Assembly: GCF_009834535.1 (NCBI RefSeq)
Contig: NC_045727.1
Coordinates: forward strand, 10,664,001-10,728,000
DNA from: Camelus ferus
Taxonomy: Eukaryota
Length of the DNA stretch: 64,000 bases
Direction: 5' to 3'
A program made the position numbers and the translations under genes. Below, in pieces: positions 1 to 44,099 of this stretch. The notes beneath the pieces are model-generated. The model saw only the letters and a program-made list of their open reading frames with translations, made no database searches and had not been told where the DNA came from. The first letter of the stretch is position 1, and every line of letters starts with the position of its first letter.

Positions 1-269
1 CTGCATAAACAAACTGCATTACTTCTTTAACTTGCTGACCCAAGCAAAAACCTCTTTCTTATGTCAAATCTTCACAAGTAAGTGATTCTTTGTCGAAAAA
101 GGGTTATAAACAGCCCACTCTGGTCACTTCTTAGGTCCTATACCTACGCGGCCTCCGTTCGCACTGAATTAAATTTGTTTTCCTCATGTTAACCTGTCTT
201 CTGTCAATCTGATTATTAGACCAACAAAAAGAACCTAGAAGAGTAGAGAAAAATTTTTCCTCCCCTACA
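1..269 (+). mobile_element. 3' part of an ERV1-like solo LTR, truncated by the window edge
   Basis: TATA-like ttataaa near 104, poly(A)-like aattaaa near 168, and the terminus GAACCTAGAAGAGTAGAGAAAAATTTTTCCTCCCCTACA typical of ERV1 LTR ends. It abuts L1 sequence. Family not assigned. Confidence 0.65.
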
Positions 270-800
270 AATTCTTCTAGAAAACCGAAGGCAGGAACAC
301 TTCCTAACTCATCCATGAGGCCAGCATTACCCTGATAGCAAAACCAAAGACAGTCATGAGGAAACTACAGACCAACACAGGCACAGGCACAGGCACAAGA
401 ATTTGTTAAAAAATTTCAAAATCAATGACACCTAAGCTTCTACCTTAAGAAACTAGAAAAAAAGCAATGTCCAAATTATACAGGAAAAAAGGAAATAATG
501 AAGAACAGAAATAAACTAAACAGAAAAACAAAAATCAGTGAAGCCAAAACTAGTTCTTTAAGCTGAACAATCAAATTGATAAGCCCCTGGCCAAACTGGT
601 CCAGAAAAAGAGACACAAATGACCAACAGCAGGAATGAAAAGAGAGGGTATCACGGCCGACGCTAAGGTATTGAAAGGATAAAGGAATATTATGAACAAC
701 TGTGCCAGTAAATTCAACAACACAGATGAAACGGACAGATTCCTGACACACACTGCTGACGCTCACTCAAGAAAAGTTAACCAGAATGAAAACAAAACAG
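270..800 (+). mobile_element. Old LINE-1 ORF2 fragments (two pieces) with a short (GGCACA)n repeat near 377-398
   Basis: L1 ORF2 motifs gaggccagcattaccctgat and gaatattatgaacaactgtgccagtaaattcaacaacacagatgaaacggacagattcct; A-rich and full of stops. Confidence 0.8.
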
Positions 801-2566
801 GCCATCAAAATGGCCACATCATGAGACACATAATTTTAAGCATGGGTATTATTTTCCCATCATATAATTACCATCACATTACAGTTCAGAAAGCTCAAAC
901 TGCTTCAAATTGTTTCTAATTTCCTAACCCAGATTTGTGATTCTCCTAGTGATGGTCTAGAAGCCCAGAAATTCAGCTTCTGGTTGTGTTTCTAGTAAAT
1001 GACAGACAAGGGCCAAGTCATAGCTGATTCTCTAATTCTTATTCCAGCCAAACTTCAGTACTGAGCCAGAAAAAATTACCCTGCAAGGCAGGGACAAATT
1101 CTCCAGAAGGTACTCAGCTTTGTGATGAGGCTCTAGGATGCACAAACCAGGATTTAAACAAAATTTCTGCTGCTGGGATTCCCATTAACTTCATCTTGAG
1201 ACACAAACCCTTCCAACAAAGGGAAAGCATTTGTAATGGCCAACAGTCTCTAAGAGGCCAGAGTCATTTCTCTTTGGTTATACTCACACCAACTCATCAC
1301 CCCCTCAACAGGTGTTTCCTAATTATTTGGTTAAACTAAGTATTGTGAATTTCAGCACTTCAACTTGAGAAGACCCTGGCACACCAGCAAACAATGGCTG
1401 CACAGCTCTTCTGAAAGTATTAATCATGATATTTTTCATACTTAAGACAAAGCCTTTGCTAAAAATAACAGCTCCTACAAATGATGAAATGCACAAATTT
1501 CTCCTCATCTTGAAGTTTTCTTTTATCTGTCAGGTAACAGAAGACACCTTTCCTTTATACTTAGAATAATTCACATTTACAAAAAAACAAAAAACTTTTG
1601 AGCAGTTTGATTTCATGCTGTGCAATGACCAATAAGAGAAGCCTCAAAACCAACTTCTGCAAAGGGAGAATGCAGCAGCTAGTGAGTTATTTCATCACCT
1701 ACTTTATTCATAGTCTGGAAACTACCACGGTGATCAGAAGAGGACACGGGAGCTGAGGGGACATCAATCTCAGTTAACAGGGAACAAGGGAGACATGCAC
1801 TGGACCATGCAAAGTCCTGACGGGGGTTATTCCAGCCTCTCAACGTAAAGCGGATTCTTGGGCACCACTGGTTTTAGACGTGCATAATGACAGAGGTGTT
1901 GATGGGGTTTCATTCATATGTAAACCAGTAACATAATTAATTCAACAATCACCTAGATACCTATGAACTGAGAACGTTAAAATGAATAAATTAAAGCCAG
2001 AAGCCTACCCTGCCGTGGGAAAACAGGAATTCTCATATACGCGTTGCTGATGTAAAGAAATTTGACATCCCATATACACCCACCCCAGTGAGAAACAGTG
2101 CATGCACACTCCTCACTGACACTCTAGGTGTGAGTGGCTGGAAAACATCCACATATTCAGCGACTGAAAGCCGAACTCAGCCACACCCTGGAATACTCCG
2201 CAGCAGTAAACTAGGATCAGCTCTTTGCCGCTAATGCAGAGGGACGGGGGCTGTTTGCACAATGAAAAAACGAGGCAAGAGAAAGGGGAGACGTACACAA
2301 ACCTACTCTTGTGTGCTTGGTTTTGCTTAAAAAAAAGAAAACAAAAACAAACAACCCTTCTAATGGATGAAGCGAGATTTTTTTGGCATATGCCGTCTTA
2401 TATCGTTATTATTTCAAGGTCTATTCTTGTAAGTGCCCTCATGAGCTCATAGCAAAGACAAACTAGAGTTTAAGTGCAACCCTTGGCGTTACCTTCGGAA
2501 GGAAGAGTCTGTGGAGTGTGTCCATCGCCAGCCCCGACCCACATGCTCTGGAGATGAACTCGCCAC

Positions 2567-2689
2567 CCGGGCCTGACCCCCGGGCCCCTGTGCCATCCCG
2601 TCCTGTCCACTGGGCCCCACCGCCCGTCCAGGCCTGACCCCTGGTCCCCTGTGCCCGTCCCGCCCGGTCCTCTGGGCCCTACCGCCCGT
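2567..2689. repeat. Two-copy imperfect tandem duplication with a 61-62 bp unit
   Basis: 2567-2627 ccgggcctgacccccgggcccctgtgcc...ccgcccgt versus 2628-2689 ccaggcctgacccctggtcccctgtgcc...ccgcccgt. Confidence 0.9.
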
Positions 2690-2691
2690 AC

Positions 2692-2694
2692 CAT
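2692..2694 (-). CDS. TUBA3: Exon 1 (ATG only) of a second alpha-tubulin-3-like gene; the rest is presumably left of the window
   Basis: The minus strand reads ...gaccaccATG|gtacgg, the same ATG|GTACGG junction as the intact TUBA3 at 38453-38461, and the upstream promoter is homologous. Exon 2 (RECISIHV) is not found in 1-2690, so intactness is unknown. Confidence 0.7.
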
Positions 2695-2749
2695 GGTGGT
2701 CACCGCCGAGCCGCTCGCTGTGCTCCCAACTCCTCTTTGTCCGACACCA

Positions 2750-3160
2750 CGCGCGCAACTGCCGGCCCGCCGCACTGCACGCCGTGTCCTGATTGGTTCG
2801 CAGGCTGAGCAACTGCCATTGGCCCCGACAGCCTCGAGGGCAGGCCCCAGGCCAGGACCCTAATGGCAATTGGCCTGTTCCTTGACCAGCGAATTCTCTT
2901 TTGATTGGTCGTCACTTTGGGCGGGAAGTGGCGACGGGAAGGTCTCGTATTGCGGTGGCAGGAAGCCGCGGGCTGGCGCCTGCTGAGTGACCACAAAGGG
3001 AGGCCGGGTAATTTATCTGTAAAATGCGGTCCCTTTGTGTTGCTGCACGGGGTGTAGGAAGTGACAGGGCTCATCACCGACAGGGCTTTGCAGACTTGGC
3101 TGGAGCAGACACGTGCAAGGGCTCCTCAGTTAGCAACCTGCGCTGACGTCATTACCCCGC
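2750..3160 (-). promoter_or_regulatory. CpG-island promoter of the left TUBA3-like copy
   Basis: CCAAT boxes (ATTGG on +) at 2792-2796, 2818-2822, 2869-2873 and 2904-2908; E2F-type TTCCCGCC at 2920-2927; MYB-type CAACTGCC at 2756-2763 and 2810-2817; E-box CACGTG at 3110-3115; CRE TGACGTCA at 3144-3151. Confidence 0.8.
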
Positions 3161-5810
3161 CTCCTGCCAGAGCACGAGGTACCGGCCACGAGGTAGGTTC
3201 CGGGAAGGAGGCGCTGCGAAGCTGGGGAAAGTTCCGCCTTCCAGGGGGCGGGGCTTCTGCATGGGTCCGAAAATATCGCGAGTTTTCCAAGCAGCAAAGC
3301 TGGGTGGGTGGGCTGGATGGGGCAGGGCAGGCGGGGGACAGCGAGGTTGCAGCGCGGAGGGCAGTTGACCGCGGCCGGACCAGGGGCTTGGCTTTCCCGG
3401 GTGGGTGGAGCCAACCGGCAGCAAGGCGGGCTGACTCGGCCGTTTAGGGGGAGGATGGGGCAGGAGATTCCACAGGTGGTCACTGCAGGAGGCCAGAGAA
3501 TTACCAACCTGCTCACACACCTTGGCGAAAGGACACAGAATTTCCAAGGTTCCTGGAGGGGTGACTGATAACCTCAATTCACCACCCTCCCAGGATGCCC
3601 CCCATTCCTGCTGCTGATACGTGGGAGAGTCGTGTTTACCCGACCCAAGAAACGAGCCTTTTCTTGGCTGTTCTAAGCACAACCCAAATACACTGGAATT
3701 TTCATGGAGAAGACAGGACCAAAGAGGAGTTAATTAAAGAAAATACAAATAAATATAAATTATGAATTACTATAAAGTAAAATTAAAAACATAGATGCAA
3801 AATCCAGATTTCCTACCCTGCCTACCACTGCTAGGTCTTGGAGGCATGGGATGGTGTTCACAGCAGCAGTTCAGATGGTCTGGGCTCGAGCAACACCCCC
3901 TACCACCGCCATGGATTCCATGGGGCTAACTCTTCAGCTCCCCACTCCTCCCTTGCTCAGGCAGATTTCAGAGAATGTGGTCAGGAAGTTAGAAGGGTCG
4001 AGCAGCTAACTAGGGTTTCCAGGGAGTGATTTTGGAAAACCAGAAGCCCTCCTCTTCCAGGGAGGCCCACCACGATGGGTGCAAGGAACTAGGGCCAGCC
4101 TTGGCCAGAGAAGGTGATGGGAAATGGGAGAGAGGGAACCTCTGGTAAGGGCTAGAGCAGGTGGGGACAGATGTGACTGCCATGGCCAGGGCTGGGGGAC
4201 AAGAGAAGGAAGAGCTGGGAAACTGGTCCACGGTGACAAGTGATGGGGAATTTGGGAGAGGTAATATGGGGCAAGATGCTGGTGGACTTTGAAGGGTGGA
4301 GTCTGAGCTAAATTTGGCCCTGGGGAGAAGAGCAGATTGGGGAGAGGAGTGTCCAGCAAGGGGACAAGAGAGGACAGAAGCTGCAGGAGACAGGAAAAAG
4401 TGGAGGGAAAGATCACAATGACTTGGGAGAAATGTAAGATTTCTTTTGCCTTCCTTCCCCCCACCACAAAGCTCCCAGAAACTGGGGAAGGCCTGGACTA
4501 ACTGAAATAAATAAGCTGATCTGAGCAATGTCATTTGGATGCTAACAGAAATGAAAGTTCCGGGAGGCAGAAGGATGTAGGGTCAACTGGATCACATGTG
4601 GCATGTCATCTGAGTGACTGAGAGGAGTCAGAGGAGTAATGCCTTAACTTGAGTCCAGCAATGCAAAAGGGGCCAGTCTGGGGAGAAACAGTGGTCTCTC
4701 AACTTCTTAACCTTCCTCTATTTACCAGGCTTCACCTGTCTCTGGCCACTCAACTCTTCCTGTCTCTGGGGTTCTTTCTTGCAAACACTTTGGTGCTTTA
4801 TCTTTTATTTTTATAACAATTTTATTCATATAACATAATATTCACCAGCTTAAAATGTACACTTCCATGGTTTTTGGTATATCCACAGAATTGTGCGACC
4901 ATCACCACTGTTTAACTTCAGAACATTTTGATCACCCCAGGAAGAATCCCTGCACCCATTAGCAGTCACCTCCCATTGCCCTCCCCTCTCCCCAATCCCC
5001 TGGAAACCATTAATCTGCTCTTTGTCTCTATAGATGTGCCTGAAATCATACAATATGTAATCTTCTGTAACTGGCTTCTTTCACCTAGCATAATATTTTC
5101 AAGATTTATCTATGTTTCTCACCACTTTATTTATTCTCGTAGATAAATAATAGTCCATTGTATGGGTATTTCATATTTAACCCATCTTCAGTTGGTGAAT
5201 ATTTGGATTGTTTCTGCTTTTTGGCCATTATGAGTAACGCTGCTGTGATAATTCATGTACAAGTTTTTGTCTTGATAGATGTTTTCATTTCTTAGGTATA
5301 TACTTAGGAACAGAATGGCTGGATCATACAGTAACTTCCTGTTTCACATTTTAAGGAACTGCCAAATGGTTTTCCAAAGCAGCCGCACCCACCAGCAGTG
5401 TAAGGGAGTTCCAATGACTCCACATTATCTTTAACACGTGTTGTTACCTGACTTTTTGCCTATAGCTGTCCTAGAGGTGCATTGCACTGTGCTTTTGATT
5501 TGCATTTCCCTAATGACTAGTGATGTTAAGAATCCTTCCGTGTGGTTACTGGACATTTGTATATCCTCTTTGAAGAACTGTCTGTTAAGATCCTTTGTGC
5601 ATTTTTGTTGTTGAGTTGTGAGAGCTCTTTATATATTCTGGATACAATCCCCTTAGCAAATACATGATTTGCAAAATTTTCCACTCTGGATTATCTTTCA
5701 CTTTTTTGGTGGTATCCTTTGAAGCATAAAAGTTTTTAATTTCAATGAACTCACATTCATCTATATATTTCTTAGTTTGCTTGAACATTTTGGTAGCATA
5801 TTTATGAAAC

Positions 5811-6236
5811 TGTTACCCAAAAACTGGGTTCGCCTCTTGGTGGGTATCTAACCAAAAGACACAATGAAGTCAAAGAGCAGGAGAAGAAAGGATTTATTAC
5901 TCACAGCAAATAAGGAGAACACTAGGGATATTTCCCAAAACACCAGGGATATCTCCCCGAACAGCAAAATTGGGGAAGATTTAAGCTAAGGATGTATGCA
6001 TATTTATGGAGGAGCTTGGGTGGTGTATGCATATCCATGAAAGAGCTTGAGAGCAGAGGAGAATTCAACATAGAATTGGGGCATAGTTTGACAGAGTCCA
6101 GACTCTAGTTGATTGAAGTCACAGAAGTCAGCAAAGGTCCACATTAGCATTCTTTGGATTCCAGTTAGTCTGGTTATGTCGAGAAAGTTATGTCTGGTTC
6201 TCTTCCTTTGAGGACCCTATACACTATCTGCCTACA
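5811..6236 (-). mobile_element. Solo ERV LTR inserted in L1
   Basis: TG...CA ends (tgttacc...cctaca) and AATAAA on the minus strand near 5893. It interrupts the L1 motif aagaaac|cattgcc with a near-duplicated aaac/gaac flank. Confidence 0.65.
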
Positions 6237-6293
6237 GAACCATTGCCCATGCACAGTCATAAAGAGTTACTCCTATGTTTTCTTGTAAGAGTT

Positions 6294-6833
6294 TGTTGAG
6301 AGTTTATTTAAACTACTCGATAATGTTGCTATATCAGCACCCACTTTGTGTGGCCAAGTGGCCTGCAGGGATCTTCAGCTGATAATTCACTCCTCCCAAG
6401 AGTGCATGCCCTAGATGACAGCCTGCAGGTCACAGGTAATGTAAGTTGTTGACATGAATCCCTCAACTGCCCTTATGATAAGCATTCTCCCTGACCTCCC
6501 AGGCCAGCCCCTTGAGTGATCCTTAGATAAGCTTACCAAAACCCCATTCTCATTGTTCTGAATTGACCAATCCAGACTCAGCCAGGGAACTCCAAAGCAC
6601 TCCACCTGCAGACCCTAAAAAAGGCATGTCTCCCAGGTCCTGTCATGTTCTCTGCCCACACAATGCCTTAACCGCCTGTGGCCCCTCAAGGTGTGCTGTG
6701 TACCTCCTCTGGGATCTGTGAATAACAAACTTCTCTACTTCAATTCCTTCATGGTCTCTTGTTGAAGAGCGGCTCACCATCCAATACCCTCAGGGCTCCA
6801 CTTAACAAATGTTAATTCAGCCATGTCACAACA
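6294..6833 (+). mobile_element. Second, unrelated solo ERV LTR inserted in the same L1
   Basis: Inverted termini TGTTG...CAACA, flanks gagtt/gcgtt (5-bp TSD with one mismatch), and internal CCAAT, TATA-like and aataacaaa motifs in LTR order. Confidence 0.7.
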
Positions 6834-7034
6834 GCGTTCTATCGGTCCAGCTCTTACATTGAGGTCTTTGATTCATTTTGAGCTAATTTTTGTCTGTGGT
6901 ATGATGTAAGGGTCCAACTTCATTCATTTATTTGCATGAGGATATTCATCTGTTTCAACACGGTTTCTTGAAAAGACTATTCTTTCCCTCATTGAATTAT
7001 TTTGGCACTCTTGTCAAAAATCGATTTGCTATCA

Positions 7035-8150
7035 GCACAATGAGAAGACAAACCACAGACAGACTAGGAGGCATATCTGCAAAAGATACATCTGATAAAG
7101 GATTATTATCCAAAATATACAAAGAACCCTTAAAAGTCAACACTNNNNNNNNNNNNNNNNNNNNNNNNNNNNNNNNNNNNNNNNNNNNNNNNNNNNNNNN
7201 NNNNNNNNNNNNNNNNNNNNNNNNNNNNNNNNNNNNNNNNNNNNNNNNNNNNNNNNNNNNNNNNNNNNNNNNNNNNNNNNNNNNNNNNNTACCACTACAT
7301 ACGTCTTAGAATGGCGAAAATCNNNNNNNNNNNNNNNNNNNNNNNNNNNNNNNNNNNNNNNNNNNNNNNNNNNNNNNNNNNNNNNNNNNNNNNNNNNNNN
7401 NNNNNNNNNNNNNNNNNNNNNNNNNNNNNNNNNNNNNNNNNNNNNNNNNNNNNNNNNNNNNNNNNNNNNNNNNNNNNNNNNNNNNNNTGAATTGAAAATT
7501 TATCTCCACACAAAAACCTGCACATGGATGTTTATAGCAGCTTTATTCATAATTGCCAAAACTTGGAAGCAACCAAGACATCCTTCAGTAGGACGGATAA
7601 ATAAACTGTTGTACATNNNNNNNNNNNNNNNNNNNNNNNNNNNNNNNNNNNNNNNNNNNNNNNNNNNNNNNNNNNNNNNNNNNNNNNNNNNNNNNNNNNN
7701 NNNNNNNNNNNNNNNNNNNNNNNNNNNNNNNNNNNNNNNNNNNNNNNNNNNNNNNNNNNNNNNNNNNNNNNNNNNNNNNNNNNNNNNNNNNNNNNNNNNN
7801 NNNNNNNNNNNNNNNNNNNNNNNNNNNNNNNNNNNNNNNNNNNNNNNNNNNNNNNNNNNNNNNNNNNNNNNNNNNNNNNNNNNNNNNNNNNNNNNNNNNN
7901 NNNNNTTATACATTCATCGAAACCTATAGTGTGTACATCACCAAGAGAGAACCCTAATGTAAATGACTTTAGGTGATAATGATGTGTCAATATAGGTTCA
8001 TTGACTATAGCAAATGTACTATTTGGGCAGATGTTGATAATGGAGGAGGGTGTGCTTGTGTAGGGGGTGGGGGTATATGGGAACTCCACCTTTTGTTTAA
8101 TTTTCCTGTGAACTTAAAACTGCTCTAAAAAACAAAATCTATTTTTAAAA
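7035..8150 (+). mobile_element. LINE-1 3' end on the plus strand, nested inside the minus-strand L1
   Basis: Sense L1 motifs gatacatctgataaaggattattatccaaaatatacaaagaac, atgtttatagcagctttattcataattgccaaaacttggaagcaacc and the 3' end ctgtgaacttaaaactgctctaaaaaa. Confidence 0.8.
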
Positions 8151-8800
8151 AATTAATTGGCAAAATATTGGCCATAAATTTAATTGGTCACAAATTTACA
8201 TTGGGTACAAATTTTTAAAAATTAACTGGCCATGTTTTTGGACTCTCAGCTCTGTTTCACTGATCTGTAAGTTCTTATTTCAGTAATACACTGTCTTGAT
8301 TGCTGTAGCTTTGTAGTCATTTAGACATCAGGATGTGTGAGTCCTCCAGCTTTGTTCTTTTCCAAAATTGTTTTGGCTGTTCTGGGTCCCTAGCATTCCA
8401 CTGACAATTTCTGCAAAACAGGCAGTTGGGATTTTGATAAGGACTGAATGGAAACTGCAATTTAGGGAGTACTGCCACATTTACCATATTAAGAATTCCA
8501 GTCCATGAACATGGGATGTCTTTCCTGAATTTATTTCAATGATGTTTGGTAGTGTTCTGTGTACAAGTCTTGCATTTCTTTAGTGAAATGTATTCTAAGT
8601 ATGTTTACAAATAAATTTATTCTTTTTGATTCTATGTAAGCAAAACTGTTTTCTTAATTNNNNNNNNNNNNNNNNNNNNNNNNNNNNNNNNNNNNNNNNN
8701 NNNNNNNNNNNNNNNNNNNNNNNNNNNNNNNNNNNNNNNNNNNNNNNNNNNNNNNNNNNNNNNNNNNNNNNNNNNNNNNNNNNNNNNNNNNNNNNNNNNN
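7145..8800. other. Four assembly N gaps (~7145-7289, 7323-7487, 7617-7905, 8660-8800) inside L1 sequence
   Basis: Runs of N in the sequence. Confidence 0.95.
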
Positions 8801-9002
8801 CTAGAATTCATTTTACTTCTTCCTGCCTAGATTCCTTTTATTTCATTTTCTCACTTACTTGCCATGGCTAGAACCTCCAGGAAAATGCTGAATGCAAGTG
8901 GTGAGAGTGGGCATCCTTACATTCCCGATCAGAGGGGAATGCCCATTGGTGTAGCAGCCAACAGGTTTTTTGTAGATGGTCTTTACCGAGATGAGGACAG
9001 TT

Positions 9003-9185: not shown

Positions 9186-9789
9186 TCTTCTTTTGTTTTT
9201 TGATGCTTTCTCTTCCCTGCATCTTTGTGGTGCTGCTGTGTGGAACAGCCTTGCTTGGGTTGGGGGAAAGCCCAGCCTTACCCCTGGAAGCTTACAGTTC
9301 ACATGTCCATCATGCTTGGCCTCAAATATCCTTTGGGTGTTGCTGCCTGTGATGAGAGCACTTCTCTGGGTAGATAAACAGTCAGTGCCCTGAAACCCTG
9401 CATACCAGCTCTCACGGGGTCATTGGTGAGGCCTGAGAAGGACATTCTGTTACAAAACTGCCCAAGACTCTTGCTTTGAAATGCATTTTTCTGGATTTCT
9501 GTGTAGGCATTTCAGAACAAGGAACATCTGCTTAGTTACGTTTAGGCCACACAAGAGCAGGGGAAGGTGTCTTCCCTGCAGGAAGTGAGAGCCCATCTGA
9601 GCATCTCCTCAAGACAACAGGTACAACTCAAATCCGGCTTCAAAACCTGACATAAGAATAGAACTTTAAAAGTTAACCATGTCTTCAGTTATTGTGTGCC
9701 AGGGTAAAGCAAGAATCACAGTAGAAGATTAGAGATAAAAGTTAGGGAGTTCTAGGTCCCAAATAATTACCAACTATTAAAATTCCAGC

Positions 9790-9900: not shown

Positions 9901-11239
9901 AAATTCCAAAGCTTTGCTTCTCTACTTGGTACCCTGTCACATGTTTCTCATCTATACAGGGGCTGATTAATACGCTCTTATAACTCTTCCCGGATACCCA
10001 GGACCTGCTGAAAATCCTCTCAGTATAACATGATTTAAGATAAAACTGTCACCATGTCTATACAAGAAAAACACTTTTTAATGCTGGATTTTTGCTTCCT
10101 CTCAGGACTATCATGGTTTTCTAGTTTATGTTCTTTGCCTAAAGGGAATAGAAGAAATCACCCAGGAAAACTCTGGGAAATGTCTGGATCAAAAAAGCTC
10201 AATGAGTCTGGTTCCCTGCCTAGTCCAATGTTATTTTGAGAATAAAAGTGGGGTGGAAAAAAAGAGACAGTATCAGCCAAATAACAGAAGGGAGCGAGGG
10301 GGCTGGATAAGGCAGTGTTCCCAGCGGCACCTTCTTGCCAGGGGGTGGTCCACCAGCCTGCCGTGAACCTACTGAACCAGACAGGCTGGAGGTGCCCTTA
10401 AAATCCTATTCCACAAACCACATATAAACCTGCAAACAGGTGGGAAGTTCTGGGGGAAGAGGATACCTGTTTTGATTTTGCTTTGCTTGGATGGATGGTC
10501 ATCATCTTGCCGTGACAAGGGCACACCCCATCATACACACCTTTTCACTTTCAAAGCAGTGGAAAGAGCTGGGCAAAGAGCCCCGGTCCCAGGAAGAAAC
10601 CAGCCTGGTCACGTGATGGGCCACAGGGCTGGCCTGTGGTGCGGGGACTGGCATGAAGTGGTGCTCAGTACACTGTGCCTCTCACTGACAGCCACGAACT
10701 GGGGGGCTGCTGTGAGGTCCCCCACGGTCTGAGGGGCCCTAGGGGTGCCCAGAGCTGGTGGGCTGTGGGTTGGTCCCAGGATACTGCTTCCTCTTTTTAG
10801 GAAACTGTGCATAGCTAGAGGCTAGGAACAGCCAGCCTGAGTTCTGCCAATTCATAGGACATTCCTGAGAGTCGTGCACTCCCCCGCCAACCTATGAGGT
10901 GTCTTACTGTGCGGGGGATGTCAGGATTGCCCAGGGCCACTCAGGCAGACCTGTACTCTCAGCTTACCAGGGCCTGCCTGACTCCAGCGCCCCCACACCC
11001 TCAGTGCTGGGGATTCCTGGATGGTGTCCCGCTTGGTGAGGGATAAACGAGGGAGTCTGCAGCAATGGAATGCGGATGGGATCCAAACCAATCCCCGCAA
11101 ACCTGCACCTCAACCTCCACCAGCTTCGGAGGCCACCCTAGTGGCCTGGGCTTCCTCATCTGTGAACTGGGCACAGGGATAGGGCGTCCCCAGAACCTGG
11201 CGAGTTAGGAGTGAGTAGGCTACCTGGATGTTCGTGACA

Positions 11240-11520
11240 GCGAGGTGGGGCCCTGCGCTGGGTCTGGCGCCCGGGGGGTAGGGCGGGCTCTGCGTGCAGA
11301 CGACACCGGCAGGCGGCAGGCGGCAGGCGGCAGGCGGGGCGGGCTCAGCGCACAGAGCAGCAGCAGCAGCGGCAGCAGCAGCAGCGGAGACAGCAGGTGG
11401 GTCGCAGGGTCCTGTGCAGACGACTCGGGAGGAGGCAAAAGCTCAGGTGCCTGGGGACGGGGCGCGGTGAAACTGGCTCCGGGGGTAGCAGGGGCGTACG
11501 GCGGGGCCCGGGCACAGCTC
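11240..11520 (+). promoter_or_regulatory. SLC7A4: SLC7A4 CpG-rich promoter and non-coding exon 1 (donor after 11396)
   Basis: CpG cluster, GC boxes, donor cag|GTGGGT at 11397, and a matching acceptor ctctcctccag| before 11980, upstream of the ATG. Confidence 0.7.
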
Positions 11521-12028
11521 TGAGCCTGAGGTTTCTGAGCCAGACCCAGGGTGCCCCCGCTTGCGGCCAGCGCTCGGTTACTCCAGCCCTGCGGGGTGGG
11601 GGAGGGGAAGGTGACCATGATGTCTGAGGCCAGGTGGCCGCCTGGGCTACGCCCAGGACCGCAGCTCCACTCCTGTTCCGGGTCCTGGAGGCCTGGCCCA
11701 GCTCCCAGGAAGCCTCCGGTTTCCACCTGGCTCTGGGTTCCCAGCCGCGCTCCCTGGGGCTGCCCCCTCCTCACCCTCAGGGCTACCCCCTCAAACACAC
11801 CCAAATTCGCTCCACCAGGCTCCCTGCCCTGCCCTGCAAGCATCTCTGGGACCTCCTGCCCAGCCCTGTCCCAGCCCAGCCCTCCAGCATGCCAGCGTTC
11901 AAGGGCGCTCAGGTCCCCTGGGTGGGGTCCAAGGAAGGACTGAAGCTGGTCAGTGACCCAGCCTGTCACTCTCCTCCAGCCCTGGTAGGTGCTGGCAGCT
12001 GGCTCCGTGCTTCTCCCAACTGCCCACC

Positions 12029-14659
12029 ATGGCCTTGGGGCTGCCCAGCGCTGCTGGCCTGGCCCGCCTCTGCCAGAGGGTGAATCGGCTGAAGCGGCTG
12101 GAGGACACCACCATGGAGACATCACTGCGGCGCTGCCTGTCCACACTGGACCTGACCCTGCTGGGAGTGGGGGCCACAGTGGGCTCGGGCCTCTATGTGC
12201 TCACAGGCACTGTGGCCAAAGAGATAACCGGCCCGGCGGTAGTCGTGGCCTTCGGAGTGGCCGCTGTGGCCTCCCTGCTGGCGGCCCTGTGCTACGCGGA
12301 GTTCGGGGCCCGCGTGCACCGCACAGGCTCTGCCTACCTGTTCACCTATGTGTCCATGGGTGAGCTGTGGGCCTTCCTCATCGGCTGGAACTTGGTGCTT
12401 GAGTATGTGATTGGTGGTGCCGCCGTGGCCCGTGCCTGGAGCGGCTACCTGGATGCCATGTTCGACCACCAAATCCGCAACTTCACTGAGGCTCACATAG
12501 GCGTCTGGCAGGTGCCCTTCCTGGCCAGATACCCAGACATCCTGGCTGCCAGCATCCTGCTCCTGGCCTCCGTCTTCGTCTCCTGTGGAGCCCAAGTCTC
12601 CTCCTGGCTCAACCACACCTTCTCTGGCATCAGCATGCTCGTCATCCTCTTTGTCATCATCCTGGGCTTCATCCTGGCCCGCCCACACAACTGGGGAGAG
12701 CAGGAGGGCGGCTTTGCGCCCTTCGGCTTCTCTGGCATCATGGCCGGCACTGCTACCTGCTTCTATGCCTTCGTGGGCTTTGACGTCATCTCTGCCTCCA
12801 GCGAGGAGGCCCGGAACCCGAAGCGTGCCGTGCCCCTGGCCATCGCCATCTCGCTTGGCCTGGCAGCCAGCGCCTACATCCTGGTGTCCACTGTGCTCAC
12901 CCTCATGATGCCCTGGCACAGCCTGGACCCCGACTCTGCGCTAGCCGACGCCTTCTACCAGCGGGGCTACCGGTGGGCCGGCTTCGTTGTGGCGACTGGC
13001 TCCATCTGCGGTAAGTGGAGCCCTGCCCTGGCCCCCAGGGAGCACACCTCCATCTGGGCCTTAGTTTTACGAGTTGTATAATGGGTTCAGGAAGGTGCTA
13101 ATTATGAGACTGTCCCCCCAGGCTTGTTGGGAGGGACCTGGCTGCCCCACCCTCATCGTCCGTTCTGCGCATGTGCGTCCAGGTCTCTCTTGGACAGCAT
13201 GACTCAGCCCTCACCAGATTCCCAGTGGCCTGCGACCTAAACTGAGGGGTCCCATTCCTGGGTTGGGGGAGTGACAATCCCGACTCCACAGTCACTCAGG
13301 CTCACTCTGAGAACCCAGACAAACTCGTGCCCCTGCTCCCAAGGTGGGAGTGGCCCCGGGGGTCTGTCTGCCATGCTGACCAGCCCCCACCCTCTGCCGC
13401 AGCCATGAACACAGTCCTGCTCAGTAACCTTTTTTCCCTGCCGCGCATCATCTACGCCATGGCCGTCGACGGGCTCTTCTTCCAGGCGTTTGCCTATGTC
13501 CACCCCAGGACACAGGTGCCCTTGGTGGGCATCCTGGTGTTTGGGGTTCTCACGGCTTCTGTGGCGCTGCTGCTGGACCTTGAGGCGTTGGTCCAGTTCC
13601 TGTCCATCGGCACACTGCTGGCCTACACCTTCGTGGCCATCAGTGTTATTGTGCTACGATTCCAGAAGGTCTCTCTGTCCAGTTCCCCAAGCCCAGCCAG
13701 CCCTCGTCCCGCGCCCAAGGAGTACAACTCCTTCTCAGACCGTATAGAGCTGGTGGGCATTGAGCAGGCCCTGGCCCCTGAGCCTGGGCAGCTCCGGCCA
13801 GTCCTGAGGCCCTACCTGGGCTTCCTGGATAGGTGTGGCCCTGGAGCTGCTGTGACTTGGGCCATCTGCATCCTGGTGGCCTCAGCCATCACCCTGGGTG
13901 GCTTGCTGATCTTCGGGGACTCAGCCCTGCACCTCCCTCGCTGGGGCTACATCCTGCTACTCCTGCTCTGCAGTGTCATGTTTCTGCTCAGTGTCCTTGT
14001 CCTGGGGGCCTACCAGCAGCAGTGCCAGCAGGACACTTTCCAGGTACTCCCCACCCCCACCCCCCACTTGCTGTCAGCCCACCAGATCCTCCCACCCCCC
14101 GCCCACCTGGTCCTCTGCCACAGCGGAACGAGCCATGGCTCCCGTCTCTGGGAGGCAGCAGGCACAGCCCCCTCCACCTGCAGTCGGGCCCTGGTCTCCA
14201 GGATCTCCAGAGGCGGAGAAAGTCTCTGAGGTCTCGGGAGAAGCCCCAGCCCAGCCCTGCCCTTGTGCCTCAGATCCCCCTGGTGCCGCTGACTCCAGCG
14301 CTGAGCGTCCTCCTCAACATCTGCCTCATGCTGAAGCTGAGCTACCTGACCTGGGTGCGCTTCTCCATCTGGCTGCTCATCGGTGAGTGGGGCCTGGGCT
14401 GGGCTCTGGGCAGCCCGGAGGAGGGCGAGCCCCGGGACCTGCCGCTCATGCTCCCCCGCCCATTGCAGGGCTCACCGTGTATTTCTGTTATGGCATCTGG
14501 CACAGCAAGGAGAACCGGCGGGAGCCTCCAGGGCTGACCGCCACACGCTACGTGGTTTTCCCCAGCGGCAGCCTGGAGGGGACAGTGCAAGCCGTGCAGC
14601 TCCCCAGCGAGGCGCCAGCCCAGGAGCCCGGCCACGCCGAGCAGCCCTCCAGTCCATGA
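12029..14659 (+). CDS. SLC7A4: Cationic amino acid transporter 4 (640 aa); exons 12029-13010, 13403-14043, 14274-14382, 14469-14659
   Basis: Translation matches CAT-4 (RRCLSTLDLTLLGVG...YAEFGARV...GFDVI...LKLSYLTWVRF). All splice sites are GT/AG, phases are consistent, and the total is 1923 nt. Confidence 0.97.
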
Positions 14660-17179
14660 GGAAGGCTGAGGACCTGCCCACCCTTGCCCACCTCCTTGGG
14701 AGGCCTGCCTTCTCTCCAGGGTGGCTCCAGTTTGTGGGCCTGGCCACGCAAGGGGGTCCTTGGGACCTCTGGACTGAAGGGACTGAGCTTCACATCTTTG
14801 GAAATGGGAGTGGCCAGCGCTGGTGCGGTGGACTCTTTGCCCAGTGCCTTCCAGTTTATGACCAACTCCAGCTACCTGGGCAAGTGGGGTGGGCCGGTGG
14901 GGTAGAGTCCCCAGCCTCAGGGATCTACAGTAATAACTGCCCGTGGCCTGCCAGCATCCATTGTTCCTTGTGGCGCCGAGCCCTCACCTGCCTCCAGGAA
15001 CCACTTGTCCCCAGTGCACAGCAAAGACACAGAGCTCTGCAAGGCAGTGGAGGGGGTGTGCAGCCCTGGGACAGCCCTGAGTCGGGGACATTCAGGCCAG
15101 TGCCCTCTGCCCAGCTCAGAGGAAGCTACACTTCCCAGCAGTAGGCACCAGGCACAGAGGGGTCCAAGACTGGGGCAGAGTCAGACTCCCCTCCCCAGGC
15201 TCCTCACCACAGGACGGGTGGACCCAGAAAGTCAAGCCTGGGCCCCCAGGATGCTGCCTAGAAAGGGCAGAGGAATTTTGGGGTCCCCTTGGTTTCCCCG
15301 GGGCTTCCAGAAAGCGTGTTACGTGCCCGAGTCCTGCCCAGGGAGGCAGAGAGACACTCACACGGGCATGCAGCCACCTGGCCCACACCCTGGGGTGCAC
15401 ACCCACTTGTAGACTGAGGCAACAGCTGTTTCCAAACTCAGACTTGTGGCAGCTCTCCAGCGGTCATGGCTGGTGCTCCCAGCTCTCCATCTTTGCCCCA
15501 TCCCCAAGGGCTTTGGGTAAAGGCTCCAGTGGTACCTGCGTGGGGATGGGTACGTAAGAGCCTGGGCCTGCTCCAAATTCCTTCCAGCCCACCTGGTCCG
15601 AGGGGGTCCCCAGGCTCACCCTGGCCCGCCCCGCTGGTCCCCCCGGTGATGCTTTCACCACCACAGACACCTCCAGCTCACGTTCCTGCCCGGAAGGACC
15701 ACGCGGGAAGCTGCTGGCTTTGGCAGACTTTACTCCTTCACTGTATAGCCATCACATCAGCTTTCTCTGGGCCCCTGTCCATGTGACCCCACCCCAGGGA
15801 CGCAGGGATCCAGAGGCGGCAGAGACCCCAAGGCTTTGCTGAGGCTCCAGGTGCCAGATGGTTCCAGATGCTAGCCCAGCCTGAGCCCCAGCCTGGCCCT
15901 CCCCATTCGGCCCACGTCACTGCACCAGCAAGCAGCCAGCACGCCTGCTCACCAGGGCCCATGAGAAAGCAGCCCCTCACCTCCCAGGGGCCTCCCCCAA
16001 ATCCCTGCCGCTGACTTGGGGCCAAGACCCCTACAGCCTGTCCCTCCCTCGACTGTGGGCACCCCCTGCGGCGTGGGGAGCTCCCAGCAGGCAGGAGTCA
16101 GACCCCCATGAGGATTCCAGAGCCAGAACCAGGCCAGCCTCTGGGGGCCTCTGTGATTTGTTTGGGACTTTCCCTTCAGCCCAGATGGCTGGACTCCACC
16201 TGAAGTGAAGGACAGGGTCTCCTTCAAGCTGTTGCCTCAGGCTGGTTCTTAGGTGTGACCTCGGGCAGCAGTGAATTCCAGACACACTCCTCCCCACCCC
16301 AACAGGTTCCAGGAGGCTGGGCTGGGTGTCACCCAGGGGGCCCAGAGAAGGTCCTAGAGCCTCCAGTACTGCCGACTTAGCTCCTCCATCCTCTCCTCCC
16401 AATCCCAGCCCTCCACAGGCCAAGGGCTGTCCCCAGAAGGGGCTGGTGCACAGAAAATGAGTGGGTGCCTGTGCCCTTGCCTGGGGGCCCGAGGGGGTTG
16501 GGTTATCTGGCCTCACTTGCATTCCATGGATGAGGCCCCACACTGGGTGGGGCCCTGCCCCAGGCAGCCCAGCACCAGCACAGTGGAGGCAACCCTCTTA
16601 TCAGGCCTCTGTCTACTCTGCCTTGGACTCGGGCAGCACAGACCCTGGAGCAGCGCAGCTAAGAGTGTGGGGGCTCTACCTGCGATGGGGGCGCTGCCAG
16701 GGGAGAGGGCTGGGGTCTGCACAGACAGTGGGAGGGTCTGTTCTGACCACTGGTGAGTGGGCTGAGGCTGGGAGCACTGGTGACAGAGCCTGGGAGAGAG
16801 TTCTCCAGACACAGACACAGCAGGAGCCCCTCAGGACTAATGCCCTGTGACATGCTCTGCTGCAGGTCCCTGTGCAAAACTGGCTTCTGTATCTCCCCAG
16901 GCAGCACCCTACCAAGGCCTGAGTCAGGGGAGGGATGGTCCGCCTGGGAGTTGAAGGATGGAATTCTCCACCCCCTCGCCCCCCGTGCTGGGGCTCCATC
17001 CACGGGGTTCCCCAGGCAAGGCCCCCACCTTTCCCAGCCCAGACCCCCAACAGCAGGGAACAGCTACTAGCCTCAGGAAGGGCTGGCGAGTGGGGGCCAG
17101 TGAGTGGAGACAGGGCCAGGGTCCCGGTGTCCAGCTCCCAGTAGCAGCCGTGGCCATCGGGACAGATGCTGGGTCCTCC

Positions 17180-36599: not shown

Positions 36600-37530
36600 T
36601 GCCAACATTAAAGATCAAGTGTTCAAAGGACATTCAACAATTAGCAAAAATGCACACAATTTATGGCATGAAAGGAGAAAACCAGGATAAAAAAATTACA
36701 TATTTGTCTGGCAGTTCCTCAAAAGGTTAAACATGGAATTGACCATATGACCCAGCAAGTCCACTCCTAGAGAAACAAAATCAAGTGTCCACACAAATAC
36801 TTGTACACATATGTCCATAGCAGCGTTATTCATATTATCTACAAAATGCAAATACCTACCAAGTGATGAATGGATAAATAGAATGAGGTATATCCAAACC
36901 ATGGAATAGTATTTGACAATAAAAAGGAATGAATTGGGTGATGGAAATGTTTTAAAATCAATAATGGTAATGCTTGCACAACTCTGCAAATATACTAAGA
37001 GTAACTGAATTGTATACTTTAAACAGGTGAGTTGTATGGTAAAATTGTTTAACAGAAATAGGGATGAAGTTCTGACACGTGCTACCACAGGAATGAACCT
37101 TGGAAACACTGTGAGCAGTGAATGAAGCCAGTCATAAGGACCACATATTGTATGATTCCATTCACGAGATGTTCAGAATTGGCAAATACAGAGACAAAAT
37201 GTCCGTGAGAGATTGCCTCCAGCTGGGAGATGGGAGGGGCTGGAGATTGACAGCTAAAGGCTGTGGGTTTCTTTGGTGGATAAAAATGTTCTAAAATGGA
37301 CTGTTGTGGTGGTTGCACAACTCTGTGAATATAGGAAAAAAAATCACTGGATTGTACACCACTTTAAATGGGTGATGTATACGTGAATTATATCTCAAGA
37401 AAACTTATCAAAAAATCATATTATTTGGCTCAAAATGTGTTTAAAAATGTATCAATGTATACACTAGGAGAAAAATGAAAAAGATCACCCTCCCCACACA
37501 CATATTAACAATGACCATCTCTAGGAGGTG
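36600..37530 (+). mobile_element. Old LINE-1 (L1MB/MC-like) 3' UTR between LRRC74B and TUBA3
   Basis: tctggcagttcctcaaaaggttaaacatggaattgaccatatgacccagcaagtccactcctag...atgaaccttggaaacactgtgagcagtgaatgaagccagtcataagg. Confidence 0.8.
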
Positions 37531-38452
37531 GGCTTACGGATTTTTACTTTCATTCCTTTATATTTTTCTGCATTTTTCACACTTCCTACTCTAAGTATGT
37601 GTCGCTTTTATACTCGGAAAGATATACAGTATTTAAGAACACGGTGGAATAGGTGGCATGGCGTGGTCGCAGCCCTGGCCAGGACGGGGGCGCTGCACAC
37701 TGAATCGCGCTCCTCCGACGAGGCTCAGCCACAGTGACCGCACGGAAAGCCAGGACATAATCAGGGTCGCAGAGGCCCTGAAGGTGGGGCCCCGGCCCCG
37801 CAGGATTAGCGCCCTCGGAAGCGCGGGCTCGGTCAGCCGAGTGAACCCGGAAGGGGCCGACCCTCCGAGGGGACGGTCACCTCCAGAGACCAGGGTCCCA
37901 GCCTCGAAGAGCCCTTCCCGCCGCTGCACCCCCTCCCCGCGCCCCTAGAAGCCAAGGAAAGCCAGCCCGGCCATCCTCACGGGATGGTCCGCCCTCCACA
38001 GTGGGCACTGCGCGTCCCAGCCCTGGGATGGGGCCGGGGCTCCGCCCTACCCAGCTCCCTGTAGCGGGCGGTGTAAACCAGGCGGCCGAGCCCGCGAAGA
38101 CCCGATAGGGAGCGGGGTCCCGGGCCAGCAGCACTAGGTGGTGAGCGCCCTGCGGCCGCGCTGACCTGAGGGCAGGGGTTGCGCGGGAGCTCCCGGCTGC
38201 ACTCCACTCTGCGCGACCCACGACCTCGCAGCCTTCCCGCCAAGCCCACATCCAATCAGAACGCACCACTCTCCGCGGGTCGCGCGTCGGCCAATCGGGA
38301 GTGGGGTTCTGGGCCTCGGCCCACCCCACGGCATCCGGGACCAATGGTCGCCGGCGGCGAGTGGGCGGAGCGCGCGGCGAGCCGGCGGCGGCGGCGGCAG
38401 TTAAGCATTAGCAGCGGTTGAGGTTGGAGCGGCGGCGGCGACTGAACTCACC

Positions 38453-43863
<5,411 letters not shown>

Positions 43864-43925
43864 CCGTGAGGCATGGCTGGCGGCCCCGTACCCCGCGACT
43901 ATAACGTTACAGAATGTATTTACCT

Positions 43926-43931
43926 ATTAAA
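43926..43931 (+). terminator. TUBA3: TUBA3 poly(A) signal ATTAAA
   Basis: 62 nt after the stop codon and followed by U/GU-rich sequence. Confidence 0.7.
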
Positions 43932-44099
43932 GTTTCTGTTTGGCACCGTCTGGTCCTGTGCTGCACTTCGCCCTCACTCCCATCCCGATACCAGCCTTCT
44001 CCGAGCGGGTTTCTAGGGAAAACACACTTTTCCGCCGACAGAGAAAACGAAGCTCGTCCGTGTTGAGCTGCGGCCTCGCTCCCGGAGTACGGCTCGGCC

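What the first reader, a model, noticed from the sequence alone, without database searches (positions are those of the whole stretch)
2690..2930. Hidden second TUBA3 gene: an inverted paralog visible only as a promoter plus a 3-nt exon
Seen: the minus strand has ccaccATG|gtacgg, matching the junction of the intact TUBA3 (ctcaccATG|gtacgg at 38453). The upstream 240 bp align block by block with 38230-38455 (ttcccgcc...ccaatca; ggccaat; ggg.ccaatgg; ggcagtt). Known: alpha-tubulin exon 1 encodes only Met, so ORF finders miss it. Human 22q11.21 carries the pseudogenes TUBA3FP and TUBA3GP in this neighbourhood. Inference: this genome has two divergently oriented TUBA3 genes flanking SLC7A4-P2RX6-LRRC74B, possibly the ancestral functional pair, with exon 2 pushed out of the window by L1/LTR insertions in intron 1.
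Basis: partly seen in the sequence, partly recalled or inferred. Interest (0 to 1): 0.8.

Follow-up and report, generated by a model that had tools for sequence, protein, structure and literature searches.

The report
First exon of second TUBA3 gene
The stretch is the promoter and tiny first exon (just the ATG) of a second, inverted testis-type alpha-tubulin gene whose other exons lie about 4.4 kb beyond the window's left edge; the gene pair is real but already annotated in cattle, so the finding is correct and ordinary.

Summary
On the minus strand, CACCATG|GTACGG (2698-2686) is identical to the exon 1 junction of the intact TUBA3 (38449-38461). The 240 bp upstream share the same ordered motifs: CTTCCCGCC, three CCAAT boxes at matching spacing, and GGCAGTT. 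Alignment without the junction gives z=10 (0 of 500 shuffles).

No tubulin exon lies in 1-2690. A dromedary locus overlaps window 876-1 (0.7% substitutions) and continues into tubulin exons 2-5, then MZT2 and SMPD4. Intron 1 is therefore about 7.1 kb. Reindeer has the same layout, with the ATG|GT kept.

The left gene body is 99% identical to the right copy, introns included, in a mosaic that points to gene conversion. Its 8 coding differences are all synonymous. The promoters are only about 55% identical. The left promoter sits in a preserved CpG island.

The cattle annotation already lists THAP7, TUBA3E, LRRC74B, P2RX6, SLC7A4, TUBA3C, MZT2B, SMPD4. By neighbours, the left copy matches human TUBA3E (2q21.1) at least as well as TUBA3GP.

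Transcription in camel could not be shown, and L1/LTR content of intron 1 was not confirmed.

The parts
2692..2694 (-). ATG, the only coding bases of exon 1 of the left (MZT2-side) TUBA3 gene. The GT donor follows at 2691-2690.
   Evidence: CACCATGGTACGG is identical to the right copy at 38449-38461. It is conserved as CACCATG|GTAGG in reindeer. A marmoset RefSeq 450-aa TUBA3 model starts at an identical ...CTCACC|ATG|GTAAGG structure.
2695..2765 (-). Putative 5' UTR. The transcription start is not mapped. It includes the conserved block GGCAGTTGCGCGCGTGGTGTCGG (2763-2741).
   Evidence: Alignment A3: the block is shared by camel left, reindeer left and cat promoters. The extent is inferred, with no RNA evidence.
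2766..2930 (-). Core promoter: CTTCCCGCC (2928-2920) and four CCAAT boxes (2908-2904, 2873-2869, 2822-2818, 2796-2792). There is no TATA box.
   Evidence: Homology to the right-copy promoter gives z=10.1 and to the cat promoter z=18.
2450..3500 (.). CpG island around the left promoter.
   Evidence: GC is 0.59-0.68 and CpG observed/expected is 0.58-0.83, against 0.0-0.2 in the flanks (800-1700 and 3800-4900).
1..2691 (-). First 2.7 kb of intron 1 of the left gene. The whole intron is about 7.1 kb and continues beyond the window's left edge.
   Evidence: No tubulin exon lies here. L003 1-888 matches window 876-1, and exon 2 is about 4.4 kb further on. The stretch is collinear with reindeer intron 1.
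2570..2689 (-). A 31-nt minisatellite, G-rich on the transcribed strand, that starts right after the exon 1 donor.
   Evidence: 3.6 copies in the window. Reindeer has 14.7 copies at the same place.
38229..38455 (+). Paralogous promoter and ATG exon 1 of the right (THAP7-side) TUBA3 gene.
   Evidence: It is orthologous to the cat THAP7-side promoter.
40266..43938 (+). Right-copy segment, from the end of intron 1 through exons 2-5 and into the 3' flank, that is 99% identical to the left gene body of the dromedary. Exons are 40327-40548, 40886-41035, 41335-42018, and exon 5 ending at 43860, with 43562-43709 masked.

Best explanation
Window 2692-2930 on the minus strand is the CCAAT-box, CpG-island promoter, the 5' UTR and the ATG-only first exon of the MZT2-proximal TUBA3 paralog. 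Cattle annotates this gene as TUBA3C, and by its neighbours it is the counterpart of human TUBA3E.

Transcription would start near 2765 and run leftwards. The ATG would be spliced from the GT at 2691 across an intron of about 7.1 kb to exon 2, which lies about 4.4 kb beyond the window's start. The product would be an alpha-tubulin identical to that of the right-hand gene, at least over exons 2-4 and the tail.

The two genes are an old inverted duplicate pair. Their bodies, from about 60 nt before exon 2 to about 80 nt after the stop, are kept nearly identical by gene conversion. Their promoters and first introns have diverged.

Shown directly: the homology of promoter and junction, the gene body and neighbours in dromedary and reindeer, the synonymous-only differences, and the CpG island. 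Inferred: the transcription start, use of this exon in camel, and the intactness of the gene body in this very genome.
For: - Junction and motif chain: with statistics.
- Only one set of tubulin exons 2-5 is in the window.
- Dromedary L003 1-888 equals window 876-1, with 6 substitutions in 876 nt. A tubulin body follows at 5241-8901, then MZT2(-) and SMPD4(+).
- Reindeer L001 is collinear with window 9537-1, keeps CACCATG|GT at 9529, and has exon 2 at 16704.
- Left-copy exons 2-4 carry 8 nucleotide differences, all synonymous, with no stops and splice sites kept. Seven of these lie in a 148-nt tract that is 10% diverged.
- The CpG island is preserved.
- A marmoset RefSeq model shows the ATG-only exon 1.
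- Cattle gene order is THAP7, TUBA3E, LRRC74B, P2RX6, SLC7A4, TUBA3C, MZT2B, SMPD4 (PMC12607924).
- The MZT2-side gene is also present and annotated in felids.
Against: - There is no RNA evidence. The runs that hold 2560-2960 also hold the intergenic 3300-4700, so they carry the genome broadly. The one successful read-laying showed no joint.
- The gene body was seen in a sister assembly or species, not in this genome.
- Camel-reindeer identity of the promoter (0.67-0.74) is no higher than that of the flanks, so there is no footprint at 150-bp resolution.
- Gene conversion from the right copy could keep a dead left copy looking intact.
- The non-RefSeq gene models in dromedary and reindeer do not use this exon.
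- The part of exon 5 that corresponds to the masked stretch was deliberately not read.
Confidence: 0.82

Rival explanations
1. Relic promoter. The ATG exon and promoter are a decaying remnant. The left gene body is either a pseudogene kept intact-looking by gene conversion from the right copy, or it is driven from another start inside intron 1.
For: - No transcription was shown.
- The promoter is no more conserved than its flanks between camel and reindeer.
- Felid RefSeq models of 415 aa start inside exon 2.
- Ab initio models in dromedary and reindeer start inside intron 1.
Against: - The CpG island is retained at observed/expected 0.6-0.83 while the flanks are at 0-0.2.
- The ATG, the GT donor, three of four CCAAT boxes and the GGCAGTTG block are kept in reindeer. 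The left promoter keeps ancestral blocks that the camel right copy has lost.
- All 7 exon differences in the unconverted, 10%-diverged tract are synonymous.
- Cattle annotates the gene as protein-coding.
Confidence: 0.13
2. Promoter of a non-tubulin transcript, such as a long non-coding RNA or a read-through into SMPD4. It would reuse a tubulin-derived first exon.
For: SMPD4 lies on the same strand about 20 kb downstream.
Against: An intact tubulin body with a kept exon 2 acceptor lies between the exon and SMPD4. MZT2 is on the opposite strand.
Confidence: 0.03
3. Chance resemblance between two GC-rich CCAAT-box CpG islands.
For: Strict-scoring local alignment of the promoters alone is marginal: z=3.5, with a score of 29 against 28 for the best GC-rich control.
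Against: - A 13-nt identical junction gives z=7.5.
- Soft scoring gives z=10 and z=18.
- The motif order and spacing match.
- A tubulin gene body lies downstream in two relatives.
Confidence: 0.02

Closest known systems
Cattle TUBA3C, the MZT2B-adjacent gene, paired with cattle TUBA3E, the THAP7-adjacent gene, on BTA17 (gene list in PMC12607924, Table 4)
   Same: The gene order matches what the window plus L003 shows: LZTR1, THAP7, TUBA3, LRRC74B, P2RX6, SLC7A4, TUBA3, MZT2B, SMPD4.
   Different: No cattle sequence was compared here. The gene names come from an annotation pipeline and do not imply orthology to human TUBA3C.
Human TUBA3E at 2q21.1, next to MZT2B and SMPD4
   Same: It has the same neighbours, tubulin-MZT2-SMPD4 (human list in PMC13654587; camel, reindeer and cat loci).
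   Different: In human this block is on chromosome 2, separated from the 22q11 genes. No human sequence was compared. The only primate promoters seen (marmoset, without neighbours in the locus) are of the right-hand type, not the left-hand type.
Human pseudogenes TUBA3FP and TUBA3GP at 22q11.21
   Same: TUBA3FP sits between THAP7 and P2RX6 (PMC13488206), which is the position of the window's right copy.
   Different: The camel copies look functional, with no disablements in the parts read. The human order of P2RX6, SLC7A4 and LRRC74B differs from camel and cattle, and human has an extra P2RX6P. The position of TUBA3GP could not be checked in the papers held.
Canonical vertebrate alpha-tubulin gene structure, in which exon 1 is the 5' UTR plus the ATG only
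   Same: ATG followed directly by GT, and exon 2 starting with Arg-Glu-Cys. A marmoset RefSeq 450-aa model shows the same ...CACC|ATG|GTAAGG.
   Different: Intron 1 is about 7.1 kb here, against 1.87 kb in the right copy and 1.68 kb in marmoset.

Membership tests
TUBA3-class alpha-tubulin gene (5' end) | Exon 1 ends with the initiator ATG, followed at once by a GT donor in a CACCATG context | tested here: met
   The 13-mer is identical to the right copy and is conserved in reindeer. A marmoset RefSeq model has the same structure.
TUBA3-class alpha-tubulin gene (5' end) | Tubulin exons 2-5 downstream on the same strand | tested here: met
   They are absent from the window. They are present in the dromedary continuation L003 5241-8901 and in the reindeer ortholog L001 16693-20497. 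This genome's own flank could not be read.
TUBA3-class alpha-tubulin gene (5' end) | Open reading frame and splice sites intact | tested here: met
   Dromedary left-copy exons 2-4 have no stops, encode a protein identical to the right copy, and keep their splice sites. The last 150 coding nt plus the 3' flank are 100% identical. The 148 nt equivalent to the masked stretch were not read; they have the same length by coordinates.
TUBA3-class alpha-tubulin gene (5' end) | Promoter homologous to other TUBA3 promoters | tested here: met
   z=10.1 against the camel right copy and z=18 against cat. Shared blocks are seen in alignment A3.
TUBA3-class alpha-tubulin gene (5' end) | Transcribed, with exon 1 spliced to exon 2 | tested here: inconclusive
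The RNA runs that hold the stretch also hold the intergenic 3300-4700.
Unprocessed tubulin pseudogene (TUBA3FP/TUBA3GP-like) | Disabling mutations in the coding exons | tested here: not met
   There are none in exons 2-4 or in the unmasked part of exon 5 of the dromedary left copy. All 8 differences are synonymous.
Unprocessed tubulin pseudogene (TUBA3FP/TUBA3GP-like) | Decayed promoter that has lost its CpGs | tested here: not met
   CpG observed/expected is 0.58-0.83 over 2450-3500, against 0-0.2 in the flanks.

The most novel reading that the evidence does not exclude
The camel pair may be a clean case of coding-sequence homogenisation combined with regulatory independence. Gene conversion keeps 3.7 kb of gene body, introns included, at 0.2-1% divergence in a mosaic of tracts. 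The promoters (about 55% identical), the first introns (7.1 versus 1.9 kb) and a G-rich minisatellite at the start of the left intron have stayed distinct since before the camel-ruminant split. This suggests the two genes supply the same protein under different control. The near-identical inverted repeats could also flip the LRRC74B-P2RX6-SLC7A4 block by recombination between them, and that block has a different order in human.
Probability: 0.3. Interest if true: 0.4.

Novelty: already known. Interest (0 to 1): 0.2.

Why it matters
It shows that a reader of bare sequence can detect a gene from a 3-nt coding exon and its promoter, and it fixes the gene model at a window edge.

Biologically it adds little. 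The TUBA3 pair around LRRC74B-P2RX6-SLC7A4 is already annotated in cattle, and the MZT2-side and THAP7-side genes are annotated in cats.

Three points are of modest interest:
- The gene bodies are homogenised while the promoters have diverged.
- The left copy sits next to MZT2-SMPD4, which ties the 22q11-like block to the human 2q21.1 block. This suggests that human TUBA3E, rather than only TUBA3GP, descends from this gene.
- This neighbourhood has been duplicated again and again in several mammals.

Tried and rejected
- **Read laying on 2460-3120:** it gave only three contig pieces: an intron piece at 2460-2689 and promoter pieces at 2776-3062. There was no joint.
- **Depth as evidence of transcription:** I first read the depth of the X1 contig as evidence of transcription. 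I dropped this because the same study's runs also hold the intergenic 3300-4700 at 0.46-0.84, and their contig sets are genome-sized.
- **Upstream matches as part of the duplication:** I first took the collinear inverted matches 4871-5364 versus 36709-37340 as part of the duplication, perhaps a P2RX6 tail. I rejected this. The stretch is an L1-like repeat, and each copy matches an unrelated copy in L004 better than they match each other.
- **L1/LTR content of intron 1:** no Pfam hit was found in its ORFs, and no similar copies turned up in about 130 kb of other sequence. The claim is neither shown nor excluded.
- **Strict-scoring promoter alignment:** it was marginal.
- **Rfam on 1-6000:** nothing was found.
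- **Red deer locus L005:** it is scrambled and full of gaps, so it was not used.
- **Earlier notes of this scan:** they had nothing on MZT2 or SMPD4.
- **Masked stretch:** the part of L003 equivalent to the masked 43562-43709 was masked in my scripts and never read.

Full report
**The observation**

The minus strand of the window reads ...GGTGACCACCATG|GTACGGGCGG. The ATG is at 2694-2692 and the GT donor at 2691-2690. The plus strand reads ...GAACTCACCATG|GTACGGCCGG, with the ATG at 38453-38455. The 13-mer CACCATGGTACGG is identical in both places.

Upstream, the same motifs occur in the same order and at similar spacing:
- CTTCCCGCC at 2928-2920 versus 38233-38241.
- CCAAT boxes at 2908, 2873 and 2822 versus 38252, 38291 and 38341. 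The left copy has a fourth box at 2796.
- GGCAGTT at 2763 versus 38396.

The statistics depend on the scoring. The junction plus or minus 30 nt gives z=7.5. The promoters without the junction are marginal under strict scoring: z=3.5, no better than GC-rich controls. Under scoring suited to old divergence they are clear: z=10.1, 0 of 500 shuffles. The left promoter also matches the cat TUBA3 promoter at z=18. DNA runs of two species labels hold 0.90-1.00 of the words.

**The intact gene, and what the window lacks**

The right-hand gene has exon 2 at 40327-40548, exon 3 at 40886-41035, exon 4 at 41335-42018, and exon 5 ending at 43860 with the TUBA3-type tail. Positions 43562-43709 of exon 5 are masked. 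A tblastn search with these exons finds no other tubulin exon anywhere in the window, including 1-2690 on the minus strand. The claim therefore had to be settled outside the window.

**What lies to the left**

That led me to the camel tubulin models among the homologs of exon 4.

*Dromedary (L003).* This locus (CM016658.2) overlaps the window: L003 1-888 equals window 876-1, with 6 substitutions and one microsatellite indel. It continues into a tubulin gene body at L003 5241-8901, then a 1000-N gap and an identical second body at 9902-13505, then MZT2 on the opposite strand and SMPD4 on the same strand. The two bodies agree at all 29 sites where they differ from the window's right copy. I read them as assembly redundancy around the gap, that is, one gene. 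Exon 2 of the left gene thus lies about 4.4 kb beyond the window's start, and intron 1 is about 7.1 kb.

*Reindeer (L001).* This locus is collinear with window 9537-1 at 70-82% identity. It keeps GGTGACCACCATG|GTAGG at 9529, has exon 2 at 16704, and is followed by MZT2 and SMPD4. The long first intron is therefore old.

I found no Pfam hits in the intron's ORFs and no similar copies in the small amount of other sequence at hand.

**Is the left gene alive?**

Evidence that it is:
- In the dromedary, exons 2-4 of the left copy have no stops, keep their splice sites, and encode the same protein as the right copy. All 8 nucleotide differences are synonymous.
- Seven of those differences lie in a 148-nt tract (40455-40602) that is 10% diverged. 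This points to purifying selection and not only to copying from the right gene.
- The last 150 coding bases and the 3' flank are identical.
- The left promoter lies in a CpG island (2450-3500, observed/expected 0.58-0.83), while the flanks have decayed to 0-0.2.
- The left promoter keeps blocks shared with reindeer and cat that the camel right copy has lost: the fourth CCAAT box and GGCAGTTG..GCGTGG..GTCGG.

Evidence against, or missing:
- Camel-reindeer identity over the promoter (0.67-0.74) is no higher than in the flanks.
- I have no RNA evidence.
- The reproductive-tract RNA runs that hold the stretch also hold the intergenic 3300-4700, so they carry the genome broadly.

**Relation of the two copies**

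The left (dromedary) and right (window) gene bodies are a mosaic:

| Window positions | Divergence |
|---|---|
| 40266-40326 | 9.8% |
| 40327-40454 | 0.8% |
| 40455-40602 | 10.1% |
| 40603-40830 | 0.9% |
| 40831-43561 | 0.18% |
| 43710-43938 | 0% |

The baseline between the two assemblies in orthologous intron sequence is 0.7%. No similarity is detectable in the rest of intron 1. Promoter identity is 0.70 for left camel versus left reindeer, 0.67 for right camel versus cat, and 0.53-0.56 for left versus right. This is the pattern of an old inverted duplication with ongoing gene conversion limited to the gene body.

In cats, the MZT2-side copies carry a right-type promoter that is 100% identical to the THAP7-side one, along with about 6 kb of upstream sequence. 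Homogenisation there reaches further.

**An error I corrected**

The collinear upstream matches are an L1-like repeat and are not evidence for the duplication.

**Comparison with what is known**

- The window's order is TUBA3-left(-), SLC7A4(+) at 12-15 kb, P2RX6(-) at 17.3-24.3 kb, an LRR gene(+) from 26.8 kb, TUBA3-right(+), then THAP7 and LZTR1 by collinearity with cat.
- The cattle annotation lists exactly this: LZTR1, THAP7, TUBA3E, LRRC74B, P2RX6, SLC7A4, TUBA3C, MZT2B, SMPD4 (PMC12607924).
- Human 2q21.1 has SMPD4, MZT2B, TUBA3E (PMC13654587).
- Human 22q11.21 has THAP7, TUBA3FP, P2RX6, SLC7A4, P2RX6P, LRRC74B (PMC13488206).

So the right copy sits where human has TUBA3FP. By its neighbours, the left copy is the counterpart of human TUBA3E at least as much as of TUBA3GP.

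A marmoset RefSeq model of 450 aa starts at ...CTCACC|ATG|GTAAGG, with exon 2 1.68 kb downstream.

**Verdict**

The gene is already annotated in relatives, so this is a correct but ordinary gene-structure call. The conversion mosaic together with diverged promoters is the only mildly interesting aspect.

The parts of L003 that correspond to the masked stretch were masked in my scripts and not read.

Noticed in passing
window 2570-2689; L001 9544-9988: A 31-nt minisatellite, G-rich on the transcribed strand, starts directly after the exon 1 donor of the left gene. The window has 3.6 copies and reindeer has 14.7 copies at the same place. The right copy has no such array.
   Followed up: partly
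L003 5241-8901 and 9902-13505: The dromedary assembly GCA_000803125.3 shows two tandem TUBA3 bodies on either side of a 1000-N gap. They are identical at all 29 informative sites, which points to redundant contig ends. Its gene models of 546 and 482 aa do not use the conserved ATG exon.
   Followed up: partly
L006-L011 (felid loci): Cat-family assemblies carry three TUBA3 genes: one next to THAP7-LZTR1, with MED15 upstream in one assembly, and two TUBA3-MZT2-SMPD4 modules about 100 kb apart in opposite orientation. Promoters and about 6 kb of upstream sequence are near-identical among them.
   Followed up: partly
L012, L013 (marmoset): Two TUBA3 genes encoding the same 450-aa protein lie about 130 kb apart in inverted orientation on one chromosome. 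No other gene is called within 10 kb of either.
   Followed up: no
window 12000-34000: The order TUBA3, LRR gene, P2RX6, SLC7A4, TUBA3 in camel and cattle differs from the human order TUBA3FP, P2RX6, SLC7A4, P2RX6P, LRRC74B. The block between the tubulin copies has been rearranged, and P2RX6 partly duplicated, in one of the lineages.
   Followed up: no
window 976-1650: This part of the left gene's intron 1 is 76-85% identical between camel and reindeer, more than the promoter itself at 67-74%. It could be a conserved intronic element or an old repeat.
   Followed up: no
window 36696-37340 and 4871-5364: L1-like fragments lie upstream of both TUBA3 promoters in the same relative orientation. 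Each matches an unrelated copy in L004 better than they match each other.
   Followed up: yes
window 43562-43709: Part of the last exon of the right TUBA3 gene is masked with N. It was left as it is.
   Followed up: no
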